Origin: Anolis carolinensis
Taxonomy: Eukaryota
Direction: 5' to 3'
Assembly (NCBI RefSeq): GCF_035594765.1
Contig: NC_085847.1
Location: forward strand, 5,766,001-5,830,000
DNA length: 64,000 nucleotides
Shown in pieces: positions 13,801-19,800 of this stretch. The position numbers were made by a program, and so were the translations under genes. The notes beneath the pieces were generated by a model. That model had not been told where the DNA came from, searched no databases, and saw nothing but the letters and a program-made list of their open reading frames with translations. The number at the start of each line of letters is the position of its first letter. Position 1 is the stretch's first letter.

Positions 13801-16800
13801 GGGGTTACCTCCGCGGAGAGGGGGCGGCATCCCGCGGGGCTCACGGGGAGGCATTCCTCCTCGCATGCTGTTCAGGGGCTTCTTCCGAGGGAGAGAGACC
13901 TTCAGCTTGCTGCCCTGGAAGTCTTTGCCTGGAAGACAGGAAGGAAACCCTGACGCTCCACAGTGGCTGTTGTGTGCCCTCGAGCCCTAGCACAGAGCTT
14001 CCTGAGGCTGAGAGGCTGGCACTTGACTGAGGCTGCCCAGTAGATTTCCATGCCCAAGCAGAAATCTGGACCCTCGCCTCCCAAGATTTGCTTATATCAC
14101 CATATAAAAATGGTAAATATAAAAGTAATCAATTTAACAATAAATATATTAAGTAAAATAATAAATATATTATTGTAATTCACTCACCATCAAGCCATTC
14201 CACGGCCGCTTTGGCCGTTGGCGGATCATCGTAGCACACAGTTGCGTCTCCCTTGGGCTTCCCTGTGTCTTTATCAAGGTATATGGTTATCATGGGCTGT
14301 CCTGTTCTTTTATTCATCTAAAAGTGAGAAAAAGACGATGCCCGTATCTTGAAAACGTTCCCCTTCTCCCCCCATCATCCCCTCCGTTAGGAAAATGCCT
14401 CAGCAAAGGGGCTCTGGTAGCAATCCAGCCCAAATTCCACACGTTTCCAGGACAAGCGAGGCCATGGGAAGGGAACACACACCTTGACCACGCCACACTG
14501 CTTGAAGAAGTCCGTCAGCTCCTCGAGGGTGACGTTGTCAGTCAACCCTTGAACGTACACTGCGCTGTTGTCGGCATCGTCATCTAGGTCCAGAGGTGGG
14601 CCTGCGGAGAGACGGAAGCAAGTCAGAACGCGCCCCTTGCCGCACCCCCCCCCCCCAATGGTTCCCACGGCCAGGCCCCGGCCCTCACCGAGGTCGAGGT
14701 CCGGCCCGTCGTCCAGGTGTCCTGCCGCCCGAGGAGGAGGAGAAAGAAACCACAGAAGGACCCATTAGTATGCACTGAAGCGACGCCCGCACAAAAACAC
14801 ACCGCTACCTATATTTCCAACCATTTTATTGGATGGCATGTGTTTTTAAAAACTCAAATTGACCGCACTGCAAAACAAAAAAAAATTGCAATGCACACCC
14901 ATCTTAAAAATAGAGATGCATTTGGGGCTTGCCATTGTAGCAGCCTTCTAAACCATCACCTGGGTCATAGAGGGGCTTCTCTCTCTTAGGGGGCCAATGG
15001 GGGGGGGGCTCTTGTTTACCAAGATTATTTTTAAAAACCAAACCAAACACCAAAGCCTCTTACAGAGTGGTTCCTTCCCCAAATTACAAAAAAGGGAGCC
15101 ATTCCTCTCCATCCTTTCATCAACCCTTTTAGTACCCGTCGTTTTTACACCCGTCTCTTTGTGCTTTTGCAACCACCGTAAGCGTTAAAACCTTTTTGGC
15201 AATACCGGCAGGACCCGTTAAAAGACTTCTATGGCATGTCTTTAAAAAACCGCTTTAGAAATAATACATTATTTTTCTGGCTGCATTTTATTTTATTACT
15301 TTTTATTTTTTGTTTTTAAAACCACTAGTATCCCCCGTCGTAATGCTCAAAAACTTACCACCAGGCTTACTGAAGCCAACTCGCTCTCCAGCGCTGCTGG
15401 GGGGATAAACGAAGACATGAAGGCCTTTTTTCCCTTTAAATATATAGGGAGCCTCAGGGGGCTCCAGGGAGGAGGAGGAGGAGGAGGAGGAGGAAGAAGA
15501 AGGTGGGGTCTGGCTAAACATAGATTCCAAACAAGGCATCTCTCTGTCCTCTCTGTCTCTCTCCTTTCTTTTTCTTTCTTTCTTTCTTTCTCTCTTTCGT
15601 CACTAGGCCTTTCTTCGGGGCTCCTCGCGTTCATAATCGCCAACCTTTTTGTGTTTTGTTTTTTGACGGAGGTTTGTTTTTTTTTTGCCCCATTTTTTAG
15701 GGACGGCATTAAAACTGCAATACTTGGCCAAGGAAAAAAAAATCAAAAACAAGCACGTTCCCTACGTAATGATATATATATATGTATATATATTATTTAA
15801 GCATGAATTTAAAGTACTAAAGAATGGGTCCGAGGGCTCCCTGCCTCCCTCCCGCATCCGCAAACTTGTGCCTTCATCCTCTTTGGGGAGATTTTAACAA
15901 GGCTATGGTTGGACGCTGGTGACGCTTCCTGTCTGGAGAACCCGTTAAGCATTAACAATCAATGAATCAATGGGAGAAAGCGGAAGAAATCAAGAAAAAG
16001 AATAACAACAACAAATCCTAAACCATACATTCAACTGGATTTTTTTTTTTAAAAAGAAACATTCTTCTGCAGAAGGAGCGCTTTACAAAAATAATAGACT
16101 GAGGTTTTCGAAGGCCTGAAGGCACAGCTTTGCGGAGGCAAGGAAATCAACACAGTACAATATGCGTCTAGGATTTAAAGATCTAATTTACAGGGAAAAT
16201 AATAGGGTCAATCAATAGGTTTTGCTTTGAACAGCTTATCTAATTTACAGGCAAAATTGTGGCCAATCAATAGGGTGAATAATATTTTTGGAAGGAATAA
16301 TTGAAGGCTTAAGGAAGGAGGGAGTAGGACCAACAGTTCTCGCAAGTATTGCACTTTTAATCCAAAATATATAGTTCATATACACAATTCCCAAGCTGTG
16401 ACATGCAGCTCTGCTTCTCCCCCACCCCCAAATACCACATATATATATGTATCCCTTTTTTATTAACAGATGTTTACACTTTTCTTAATGTTACACAATG
16501 CTAAAAGTTAATCACACCTCCCCTCTTTGCTTCTATTAACCACACATGAAGTTACCAAAAGTTTACACAGAAGGTTTCTTTTTTTGTTTTCCATTTACAC
16601 AACAATGAACACATCGGGTTAAAAATAATATAGATTTCTATATGTGTGTGTGTTTTGTTTTTTTTCCTCTCCATATGGACACCGTGTCTAGTCCCACTTT
16701 TCATAATGGCTGCCGGCTGAGTACTGAGTACTTTTTTTAAAGCACTGAGGTGTATACAAGGCTCTCACTTTGTAAACCTGTAGCATATAAATGCGACAAA

Positions 16801-19800
16801 GCATGTTAAAAAGGTTCCATGTTTAATTAACAGCCAGTGAAAATTATATTTAAAAAGAGATATAGATAATCGAGGCAATGAAAAAGGGCATGTTAAGAAC
16901 ATTGGGCTCCTTACCTGCCGGAGGGACGGCAAAACGCATCACCGCATCAATGAAAGGGGGCAAAAAAATCCCCATTTAGTGGCCAATTTATGCTACAACG
17001 AAGCCGCTTTTCAGCTTTGAACAAACCCAGAAATCCTCCCCATAATTTTCACAAATCAATCTATATTGAAAGGATGATATCAGAAACCAATCCACATAGA
17101 AAGGATGATATCGGAAGGCAATCTATACTGAAATGACGATATCTATATTGAAAGGACGATATCGGAAATCAATCTGTATTTAAAGGATGATATTGTAAAA
17201 CAATCTATACTGAAAGGACAATATTGGAAACCAATCTATATTGAAAGAATGTTATCAGAAATCAATTATATTAAAAGGATGATATTGGAAATCAATCTGT
17301 ATTGAAAGGATGTTATGGGAAATCAAAGGACAATATCAGAAACCAATTTATATTGAAAGGACAATACTGAAAATCAAAGGACGATATTGGAAACTGGCCT
17401 ATATCGAAAGGATGATATCGGAAACTAATCTATATTGAAAGGACGATATCGGTAATCAATTGTATTGAAAGGATGATACTGGAAAGCAATCTATATCAAA
17501 AGGATATCAGACCAATCTATATTGAAAGGACGATATCAGAAACCCTCCCATAATGGAAAGTGATGCGGTGATAGCCGTTTTAAGTGTCCACCATCTACAT
17601 AACATATATATACAGCACTAATGGAGCCCTTTTCCATTCAAGCCAAGTCTGGAAGGGTTTAAAACTCTCCGACATTTTAATTTAAGTTTTAATAATATAT
17701 ATATATTTTTAAAGGCTTGGTTGTCGTTAACACATTGTAACAATTTAAAGATTGAAAAACCCATCTGATTTCATTTGCATCAAACTATGCAGAGTGGGTA
17801 TTATTTTTCTTTTGGATGGGTCAAAACCAATAAAAAATAAATAAAATAAATAAATTTGGCACGACAAGGGCCATGTTTCCTCCACCCTCTTTAACAATAA
17901 TAACAATAACGTATCATATCTAATAATAATAATAATACCAAGAAAACTCTGCATAGTGTGGATTAGACACATGGATGGAACACACACAACAGTCCCCTTG
18001 TTGTCATCTCTTGTGCTTGAGAATAAGGCCCGAAACCAAGGCGGGAGTGGATTTGGGAGGTCTGAATGCTCCGTGGGGGGAACTGGGCCAAAGGGCTGGC
18101 TCTCTTTGCCCCCAAAACCAACCTTCAACATGGAGAGAGAGTGGCTACCTATTGGAGAGCATTGGGGGCACCGCTACGGAGGCCTGGGGCGGACGGAGGC
18201 CTCTTCCCAAAAACCTGAGACACCTTTTGTACGTACCTGCAGTGTCTGGAACAGAAAGCGTAATGGAAGGGCCCCACAGAAGGGTGTTGTGTGTGTCCGA
18301 CCCCAAACATTTATTTATAAAACAACCCACTGTGGAAAGGAGCTGAAAGTTCCCCCCAAAACCCCCCACTCTCCTCCCGACCCAAGCAAAACGCTCCTAT
18401 CCCCCTTAGCAATGGAGAAACCAGAGTGGCCTGCGCCCCCCTCTTTCAGCCCCCCTTTCCACTGCTCACCCTATTGGGGGGCAAAGGTCATATTAGGTGA
18501 GAGGAGAAAAGGGTTTGCTCTTACCCCATTCCGCCTCCACGGCCTCCCCCTCGGCCCCCTCGGCCCATGCTGCCGCTTCCTCCTCCGCGGTCAAACCCTC
18601 CTCGGCCCCTGCCCCGGCTGTCAGGGCCGCTCAGGCTGCGGCTCTCCCCCGAGAAGCCCCCCGAATCCTGGCCGTAGAGGCCCATGCTGCTGGGGTGGTC
18701 CTGGCGGAAGGAGCCTGGGCAACAGAAAGGAAGGAAGGAAGGTAAGCGCCCCTCATCCTGAGAATCTGCCAGCAGACAGTCACAGCCCAGCCCCATTCTG
18801 CCTTAAAGATTGCCGTCTCTCTTAAAATGGGTGATTAGATTATTACAGAATCACAGCTGAAAGAGACCACCAAGGGCCATCCAGTCCAATCCCCCTTTTC
18901 CCATGAAGGAAAACACAATCAAAGCCCTCCTGGCAGACCACCATCCAGTCTGTATGAAAATTCTACTGTCTACTGGTGGGAACCTATCCAAAGCTTCCTC
19001 CCACTTCAAAGCAAAATGCTTCAATCCAAGGCATGAAAGTATGCTGATGAGGACTCACTGGGCTGCCCATAGCCGCTGCTCTGCTGGCCGTACTGGCTGG
19101 GGGTCTGGCTGTAGGAGCCGGTGGGCGGTGGGTAGCTGGTGGGGGGCTGCTGGCCGTAGCTGCTCTGCTGCCCATAGGCTCCTTGTTGGCCGTAGCCGCT
19201 CTGCTGCCCATAGCTGCTCTGCTGGGAGTAAGTACCCTGGTCGTAGCTGCTTGGCTGGGAGGAGGAGTAGCTGGGGAGAGAGGGGAGGAGGGAAAAGATG
19301 CAGAAGATTACCAAGACAGGCCTCTGCACAGCATCACCATCAGAGCCATCCAAATACCACTGCCCTGTGGCCATAACTGCATTATAGAATAATAATAGCA
19401 ATAATAATGTGTGCTGTGTGTTTATTTATATTCTGTTTTTCTCCCCACAAAGCATTTCACACGAAAGGGAATGAGACATACCTGGTGGGAGGGTAGGATG
19501 GAGGGGCAGTCACCGGCTGCATGGGGTAACTTCCTGGGACCTGGTAACTGTAGTTACTTTGCCCATATCCCAGGCTGGGCTGGCTGTAGCCGGCGGTGCT
19601 AGACTGCGGCTGGCTGCTCTCCGCAGGCTTGGTCCCATCCTGGGGCCTTTTTTAACAAGAAGAAACCAGGGACAGAAGTAGGTTATTTGAGCAAGCCCCA
19701 GCATCCACTTCACTGCAAGTAGACATTCTGAATAATTTAACCCAATGTATTTTTTGCTTTGAAATCTATGATAACATAGTAAACAAACCAGCCTTATGGG

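What the first reader, a model, noticed from the sequence alone, without database searches (positions are those of the whole stretch)
16900..17580. EWSR1 intron 8: AG|GT recursive-type site whose branch point sits in a long-range RNA duplex that loops out a minisatellite
Seen: the transcript strand reads cattgatgcggtgatgcgttttgccgtccctccggCAG|GTAAGGag, with the junction at 16915/16914. This is a polypyrimidine tract and AG fused directly to a strong 5' splice site. The predicted branch point (TTGAT) overlaps a 12-nt segment (16938-16949) that is the exact reverse complement of 17561-17572, and a 5-bp helix adds to it (16926-16930 with 17574-17578). The roughly 600-nt loop is mostly a 31-bp minisatellite. 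Established: FET-family genes regulate themselves through conserved intronic elements. Inference: a structural switch that gates recursive splicing or entry into the downstream alternative last exon, and that tolerates repeat expansion in its loop.
Basis: partly seen in the sequence, partly recalled or inferred. Interest (0 to 1): 0.8.

Follow-up and report, generated by a model that had tools for sequence, protein, structure and literature searches.

The report
Conserved RNA helix guarding EWSR1 splice-site
Inside intron 8 of the EWSR1 gene, a long-range RNA helix kept by compensating mutations from this reptile to birds covers the sequence just before an invariant acceptor-plus-donor motif upstream of the gene's short-isoform exon, so it is probably a real but untested control element, and the minisatellite is a harmless insertion in its loop.

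Summary
Every sequence fact in the finding is correct. They lie in the 3.1-kb intron 8 of a minus-strand EWSR1. Taken alone they look like chance: about 4.6 perfect 12-nt inverted repeats are expected per shuffled window.

Orthologous intron 8 was recovered from four bird-like lineages and one more distant vertebrate, and this changed the verdict.
- CAG|GTAAG is invariant in all of them. It lies 117-137 nt upstream of the acceptor of the conserved alternative last exon (the human ntEWS exon).
- Both arms of the duplex are conserved islands.
- RNAalifold predicts a 24-pair helix on its own. It has three double compensatory changes between reptile and birds, and 140 of 144 cells are paired.
- The distant vertebrate has a different 13-nt perfect duplex at the same place.
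- The minisatellite is found only in this lineage and sits in the loop.

The helix covers the polypyrimidine tract up to 3 nt before the AG.

Recursive splicing is not shown.

Verdict: a real conserved RNA structure with a dual splice-site motif. Its gating role is inferred. I found no description of it in the literature.

The parts
17561..17591 (-). 5' strand of the conserved long-range helix.
   Evidence: MAFFT aligns it with the bird 5' strand (A3 columns 10-40). RNAalifold pairs columns 10-37 with 655-681.
17049..17542 (.). 31-bp minisatellite of about 16 units in the helix loop, found only in this lineage.
   Evidence: TRF. No tandem repeat in the orthologous intron of L001, L002, L014 or L028.
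16920..16949 (-). 3' strand of the helix. It covers the polypyrimidine tract and the predicted branch region, and ends 3 nt before the AG.
   Evidence: 140 of 144 cells are canonical in register, against 16-50% when the partner is slid. Compensatory pairs at A3 columns 20-670, 24-666 and 35-657.
16907..16917 (-). Invariant CAG|GTAAGGAG. The acceptor-like AG (16916-16915) is fused to a strong donor-like GTAAGG (16914-16909).
   Evidence: Identical in the window and in every bird-like locus that reaches the site. L028 has CAG|GTAAGTAG.
16778..16914 (-). Highly conserved 137-nt spacer from GTAAGG to the alternative-last-exon acceptor CTACAG. It has the outline of a mini-intron and is 117 nt in birds and 125 nt in L028.
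   Evidence: Alignment A1; blastn 85% over 264 nt against L002.
16440..16777 (-). Alternative last exon homologous to the human ntEWS exon. AATAAA lies at 16464-16459. In this species an extra T gives Gly-Phe-Thr-Lys-stop.
   Evidence: PMC8364332 describes the human exon. Birds and L028 keep a 29-aa tail.
18525..18714 (-). EWSR1 exon 8. Its donor is ATGGG|GTAAGA and it ends in phase 2, so joining it to 16914 would read GG-G TAA (Gly, stop) and rebuild a donor.

Best explanation
This is a conserved regulatory module of the EWSR1 pre-mRNA. It sits directly upstream of the alternative last exon that makes the short, N-terminal-only isoform. Shown: a long-range helix of about 22-24 pairs (17591-17561 with 16949-20) closes a loop of 180-235 nt in birds, 220 nt in a distant vertebrate and 611 nt here, where a minisatellite has been inserted. 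The 3' strand of the helix occupies the whole pyrimidine tract and ends 3 nt before an invariant CAG|GUAAG. That motif lies 117-137 nt before the conserved last-exon acceptor. Inferred: while the helix is closed, U2AF cannot read the acceptor half of the motif. The motif can then act only as an intronic U1-binding (pseudo-donor) site beside the last exon, and it influences whether that exon and its poly(A) site are used. When the helix opens, the AG becomes usable. Exon 8 joined to 16914 reads Gly-stop and rebuilds a donor (GGG|GUAAGG), which could be spliced again to the last-exon acceptor or to exon 9. The module would thus set the ratio of full-length to truncated EWS. My odds: some role in this choice about 0.55. 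Within that, U1 docking only is about 0.3 and true two-step (recursive) use about 0.2-0.25.
For: The block from about 17010 to 16337 is more conserved than exon 8: 85% over 264 nt and 73.5% over 631 nt, against 74% for exon 8 (alignment A1). AGGTAAGGAG is invariant in all bird-like loci that reach it, and CAG|GTAAGT is present in L028. MAFFT aligns both strands. RNAalifold predicts the helix with no input from me: 24 pairs, three of them with both sides changed and pairing kept, plus a UG/UA/CG series. 140 of 144 cells are canonical, against 16-50% in slid registers. Reptile-versus-bird substitutions keep 21 of 24 pairs, P about 0.001. L028 has a different, perfect 13-nt duplex ending 8 nt before its AG (0 of 1000 shuffles). 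MFE and centroid folds contain the closing helix in the window, L001 and L028. G.U pairs occur in every lineage, which makes the helix specific to the sense strand. The human homologue of the downstream exon is a regulated last exon (PMC8364332). Conserved stems that conceal splice signals, and conserved pseudo-donors, are known regulators (PMC11162794, PMC13100119).
Against: The overall folding z-scores are unremarkable (-1.96, -0.42, -1.51). The comparison has few independent lineages: one reptile, four closely related bird-like lineages and one distant vertebrate. Mammals were deliberately not examined. Birds have AGs at -4 and -13 that would compete as acceptors. In the teleost-like L029 the donor-like motif is preceded by GG and no significant duplex was found. 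Three outer or junction pairs are broken in the window.
Confidence: 0.55

Rival explanations
1. True recursive splicing. Intron 8 is removed in two steps through the zero-length site at 16915/16914, and the helix gates the first step.
For: The motif has a pyrimidine tract, an AG and a strong donor, and it is invariant. Exon 8 ends in GGG, so a donor would be rebuilt. Exons that begin with GURAG are known to be re-spliced (PMC6224609).
Against: The intron is 3.1 kb, whereas vertebrate recursive sites are described for long introns (as summarised in PMC7997972). No junction, lariat or saw-tooth data exist. Competing AGs are present in birds. The AG is absent in L029. The conserved helix would block this acceptor rather than favour it.
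Confidence: 0.22
2. The motif is a pseudo-donor only. GTAAGG is an intronic U1 docking site that silences or times the nearby last exon or its poly(A) site. The AG in front of it is never used, and the helix has another role or simply presents the site.
For: CAG|GUAAGG gives 8 contiguous pairs with U1, which is stronger than exon 8's own donor (sequence). The donor half, but not the AG, has a counterpart in L029. Thousands of vertebrate-conserved pseudo-donors are catalogued, and one of them is proven to be a U1-dependent silencer (PMC13100119).
Against: It does not explain why the helix ends exactly at the AG in three very different sequence contexts. It also does not explain why the AG itself is invariant in sauropsids and L028.
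Confidence: 0.28
3. The AG is simply an alternative, upstream acceptor that gives a longer form of the last exon. That form would encode Gly-stop, with no re-splicing. The GTAAGG is conserved as part of the ultraconserved exon block.
For: The tract and AG have an AG-free zone of about 77 nt in the window. Conservation runs without a break from the AG into the last exon.
Against: An acceptor places no constraint on a perfect donor consensus on its exon side, yet that consensus is invariant, and in L028 it is an even better donor (GTAAGT).
Confidence: 0.12
4. The features are chance motifs, or the terminal inverted repeats of a mobile element that carries the minisatellite.
For: About 4.6 perfect 12-nt inverted repeats are expected per shuffled window and 138 are observed. 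AGGTRAG is common.
Against: Both arms and the motif are conserved in birds, which lack the minisatellite. Compensatory changes are present. There is no target-site duplication and no second copy of the arm in the window.
Confidence: 0.03

Closest known systems
Human ntEWS alternative last exon in EWSR1 intron 8 (NM_001163287; PMC8364332)
   Same: The downstream exon here is its homologue. The acceptor context CTACAG|GTTACAAAG and a 29-aa tail are kept in birds and L028, and a poly(A) signal follows.
   Different: The paper does not describe the helix or the AG|GTAAG upstream of the exon. In this reptile an extra T truncates the tail to three residues.
Conserved intronic stems that conceal branch sites upstream of poison exons, SF3B3 (PMC11162794)
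   Same: A conserved intronic structure hides 3' splice-site signals just upstream of a non-productive or truncating exon in an RNA-processing gene.
   Different: Here the stem is long-range, with a loop of 180-611 nt. It hides mainly the pyrimidine tract. The masked AG is fused to a donor and lies upstream of a terminal exon, not a cassette exon.
Recursive splice sites and RS-exons (PMC6224609; Sibley 2015 as cited in PMC7997972)
   Same: An AG|GURAG motif that would rebuild a donor after the first splice.
   Different: The intron is short. What follows is a polyadenylated last exon, whereas PMC7997972 notes that typical RS-exons lack poly(A) sites. Use of the site is not shown.
Ultraconserved pseudo-5' splice sites, ENOX1 (PMC13100119)
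   Same: A deeply conserved intronic match to the donor consensus next to an alternative processing event.
   Different: EWSR1 does not occur in the main text of that paper. Here the site is fused to an AG and flanked by a covarying helix.
Pairs of conserved complementary regions in human genes (PMC8052449)
   Same: Long-range intronic complementarity with compensatory substitutions, associated with pre-mRNA processing.
   Different: In that paper's text and the supplements held, EWSR1 appears only as an eCLIP target. This pair is not reported there as far as I could check.

Membership tests
Vertebrate recursive splice site | Pyrimidine tract plus AG fused to GURAG | tested here: met
   15 of 20 pyrimidines upstream, CAG|GTAAGG.
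Vertebrate recursive splice site | Motif conserved in orthologous introns | tested here: met
   The exception is the teleost-like L029 (GG|GTAAGA).
Vertebrate recursive splice site | Lies in a long intron (tens to hundreds of kb) | tested here: not met
   Intron 8 is about 3.1 kb.
Vertebrate recursive splice site | Junction reads from the upstream exon to the site, lariats, saw-tooth coverage | not testable with these tools
Conserved long-range RNA structure (pair of conserved complementary regions) | Both arms conserved in orthologues | tested here: met
   Alignment A3.
Conserved long-range RNA structure (pair of conserved complementary regions) | Compensatory substitutions keep the pairing | tested here: met
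   three double changes and one wobble series, P about 0.001. An independent 13-nt duplex in L028.
Conserved long-range RNA structure (pair of conserved complementary regions) | Pairing seen in cells | not testable with these tools
   Needs probing or proximity ligation.
Stem with concealed 3' splice-site signals (SF3B3 type) | Branch site or tract inside the stem | tested here: inconclusive
   The tract lies inside the stem in all lineages. The predicted branch point is inside only in the window, and no branch point has been mapped.
Conserved pseudo-5' splice site | Donor consensus conserved in the intron but never spliced | tested here: inconclusive
   The consensus and its conservation are met. 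'Never spliced' cannot be tested.
Non-autonomous DNA transposon with terminal inverted repeats | Target-site duplication, further copies, and arms absent from orthologues that lack the insert | tested here: not met
   No duplication. No other copy of the arm in the window. The arms are present in birds, which have no minisatellite.

The most novel reading that the evidence does not exclude
A structure-gated, zero-length recursive splice site has been conserved since birds and squamates diverged, and possibly longer. It acts as the decision point between full-length EWS and the truncated N-terminal isoform. Opening of the helix would let exon 8 splice to the AG and rebuild a donor. That donor then chooses between the adjacent polyadenylated last exon and exon 9. 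This would be a recursive site coupled to intronic polyadenylation in a short intron.
Probability: 0.2. Interest if true: 0.85.

Novelty: new variant of a known kind. Interest (0 to 1): 0.62.

Why it matters
[quoted passage not shown] A deeply conserved helix that masks a dual acceptor/donor motif right next to that exon gives a concrete cis-element to test for control of the isoform ratio, and possibly for FET-family feedback. Compensatory mutants or antisense oligonucleotides could test it directly. The case also shows that a minisatellite can expand inside such a loop without destroying the pairing.

Tried and rejected
1. My starting view was a chance motif plus a chance or transposon-derived inverted repeat. 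I dropped it after the orthologue comparison.
No read-level evidence exists. The message called them the first such part, so other parts may exist that were not named.
3. The look-up of sequencing runs gave only coded runs kept as contigs, with their kind guessed. Fourteen small runs hold 96% of the stretch, which hints at intron detention but is not usable as evidence.
4. RNAduplex over whole introns picks GC-rich partners in L001 and L004. In birds the perfect-match test alone is not significant.
5. P0001 matches the human exon 8 peptide as I recall it (from memory, not checked with a tool). I took it for human, so its contig was not fetched, and mammals were left out.
6. L030 ends at exon 8 and was therefore useless. 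L029 gave no clear module.
7. Supplements of PMC13100119 and PMC11162794 are not held.
Exons were used singly, by reference.
9. The count of structure pairs was not used, because it needs a 701-character typed string. The counts were made in Python instead.

Full report
**Setting.** The window carries EWSR1 on the minus strand. The SYGQ-rich exons lie at 19-22 kb. Exon 8 is 18714-18525, with acceptor CCCAG| and donor ATGGG|GTAAGA, and it ends in phase 2. The small exon 9 lies near 15.4 kb, and RRM, zinc-finger and RGG exons follow at 14.6-11.3 kb. RHBDD3-like and SF3A1-like genes follow upstream.

**Observation.** All the coordinates hold.
- CAG|GTAAGGAG has its junction at 16915/16914, with 15 of 20 pyrimidines upstream.
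- A perfect 12-nt inverted repeat joins 16938-16949 and 17561-17572, with 611 nt between the arms.
- The 5-bp pair ACGGC/GCCGU is present.
- A 31-bp minisatellite at 17049-17542 fills about 81% of the loop.

Window-wide these features are not unusual. AGGTRAG occurs 27 times. Dinucleotide shuffles give 4.6 perfect inverted repeats of 12 nt or more within 1 kb, and the real window has 138. My first reading was therefore chance. The isolated 741-nt RNA does fold with this helix in both the MFE and the centroid structure.

**Reads.** No junction or lariat evidence exists in this report. The message called them the first such part, so other parts may exist that were not named.

**Orthologues.**
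- A word search with the exon 8 ORF, given by reference, returned five fragment proteins.
- One of them (P0001) matches the human peptide as I recall it. I took it for human, did not fetch its contig, and left mammals out.
- Exact look-ups of the others and of their cluster members gave contigs that carry exon 8 plus intron 8.
- These fall into four lineages that are 80-88% alike over the intron: L001; L002/3; L004-13 with L027; and L014-17 with L020. I take them for birds from their peptides and this similarity; their organisms are not known to me.
- A more distant vertebrate (L028) was also recovered.
- A second search seeded with the L028 peptide added a teleost-like contig, L029.

**A conserved block.** The window from about 16949 to 16337 aligns with L001 at 73.5% over 631 nt. 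The stretch 16921-16661 aligns with L002 at 85% over 264 nt. Exon 8 itself aligns at only 74%. In alignment A1 the string CCGGCAG|GTAAGGAGC is identical in all three sequences. AGGTAAGGAG is present in every bird-like locus that reaches the site.

Downstream lies the acceptor CTACAG|GTTACAAAG, 137 nt from the GT in the window, 117 nt in birds and 125 nt in L028. In birds and L028 this acceptor opens a 29-residue tail, which fits the alternative last exon of human ntEWS (NM_001163287; PMC8364332). L028 has CAG|GTAAGTAG at the matching place.

**The helix.**
- MAFFT aligned both strands of the window with the birds, although the rest of the upstream intron does not align (A3).
- RNAalifold, given only that alignment, predicted 24 pairs between columns 10-37 and 655-681. 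These correspond to window 17591-17564 and 16946-16920.
- Three pairs are changed on both sides between reptile and birds yet stay paired: GC to AU, UA to CG, and AU to GC. One pair shows a UG/UA/CG series. Only four cells are broken.
- In register, 140 of 144 cells are canonical. With the 3' partner slid by 1-6 columns the figure is 16-50%.
- I placed the observed reptile-versus-bird substitutions at random. This reaches 21 of 24 pairs together with three double changes in about 0.1% of trials.
- G.U pairs occur in every lineage, so the helix is specific to the transcribed strand.
- L028 has unrelated arm sequences but a perfect 13-nt duplex (1330-1342 with 1563-1575). Its loop is 220 nt and it ends 8 nt before its AG. 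None of 1000 shuffles reaches 13 nt.
- The MFE and centroid folds of L001 and L028 both contain the closing helix, although their overall z-scores are unremarkable.
- No orthologue tested has a tandem repeat in the loop. The minisatellite is therefore a lineage-specific insertion into a loop that is 180-235 nt elsewhere.
- The conserved outward extension in the window is UAAAAC (17582-17577) with GUUUUG (16935-16930), followed by two aligned pairs (17585-17584 with 16927-16926) and a few further outer pairs.

**What this implies.**
- The 3' strand covers the whole pyrimidine tract and stops 3 nt before the AG. The GUAAGG stays outside the helix. A closed helix should therefore deny U2AF the acceptor half and leave a strong U1 site: 8 contiguous pairs, better than exon 8's own donor.
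- If the AG were used, exon 8 (phase 2) would read GG-G UAA, that is Gly then stop. The junction would also rebuild a donor that could be spliced again to the last-exon acceptor or to exon 9. This is the behaviour described for exons that begin with GURAG (PMC6224609).
- I conclude that the module most likely tunes the choice between the truncating last exon and exon 9. I cannot say whether it does so as a pseudo-donor (compare PMC13100119), as a masked acceptor (compare PMC11162794) or by true recursion.
- Four points weigh against recursion specifically. The intron is short. The competing AGs in birds at -4 and -13 lie within or beside the paired strand. L029 has a conserved last-exon acceptor, but its donor-like motif about 205 nt upstream is preceded by GG, and it shows no significant duplex. 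There are no RNA data.

**Literature.** Full-text searches found no paper that links EWSR1 with recursive splicing, and none that describes this structure. In the catalogue of conserved long-range pairings, EWSR1 appears only as an eCLIP target. FUS autoregulates through conserved retained introns, and Ewsr1 is among the genes with FUS-regulated retained introns (PMC7337901). This makes feedback through the block plausible but does not show it.

**Limits.**
- The independent lineages are few.
- The organisms of the fetched contigs are unknown to me, and I call them bird-like or teleost-like only from their peptides and mutual similarity.
- Mammals were not examined.
- The spliced gene model was not joined or searched.

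**Verdict.** The splicing mechanism remains open.

Noticed in passing
window 18306-18281 and 17997-17970 (minus strand): A second conserved long-range helix in intron 8: GGACACACACAACA with UGUUGUGUGUGUUCC, loop about 297 nt. It is present in all four bird-like lineages with loops of 427-449 nt.
   Followed up: partly
window 17957-17946 and 17795-17784 (minus strand): A third conserved helix: ACUAUGCAGAGU with ACUCUGCAUAGU, loop 152 nt. It is also found in L014 and L002, and L002 shows a compensatory A-U to G-C change. Together the helices would fold up most of the 1.6 kb between exon 8 and the AG|GT.
   Followed up: partly
window 16777-16765 (minus strand): At the last-exon acceptor the window has GTTTACAAAG, where birds and L028 have GTTACAAAG. 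The extra T gives Gly-Phe-Thr-Lys-stop in place of the conserved 29-residue tail. Whether this is real or an assembly error could not be checked.
   Followed up: partly
window 17551-17533 and 17047-17028: A direct repeat of about 20 nt (ATTATGGGAGGGTTTCTG-like) flanks the minisatellite on both sides. This suggests the array grew from a local duplication.
   Followed up: no
window 15300-18800: Fourteen small runs from five studies (48-189 million letters of contigs, guessed to be RNA) hold 96% of the sampled words, including the whole intron 8. If they are RNA, this would mean a detained intron.
   Followed up: no
L029 1600-1860: The teleost-like contig keeps the last-exon acceptor context. It has TTACAG|GTGCAG followed 21 nt later by TTGG|GTAAGA about 205 nt upstream of that acceptor. 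This may be a diverged version of the dual site or a tiny exon.
   Followed up: partly
window 16866-16851 (minus strand): A 16-nt insertion relative to birds lies inside the otherwise near-identical spacer between GTAAGG and the last-exon acceptor.
   Followed up: no
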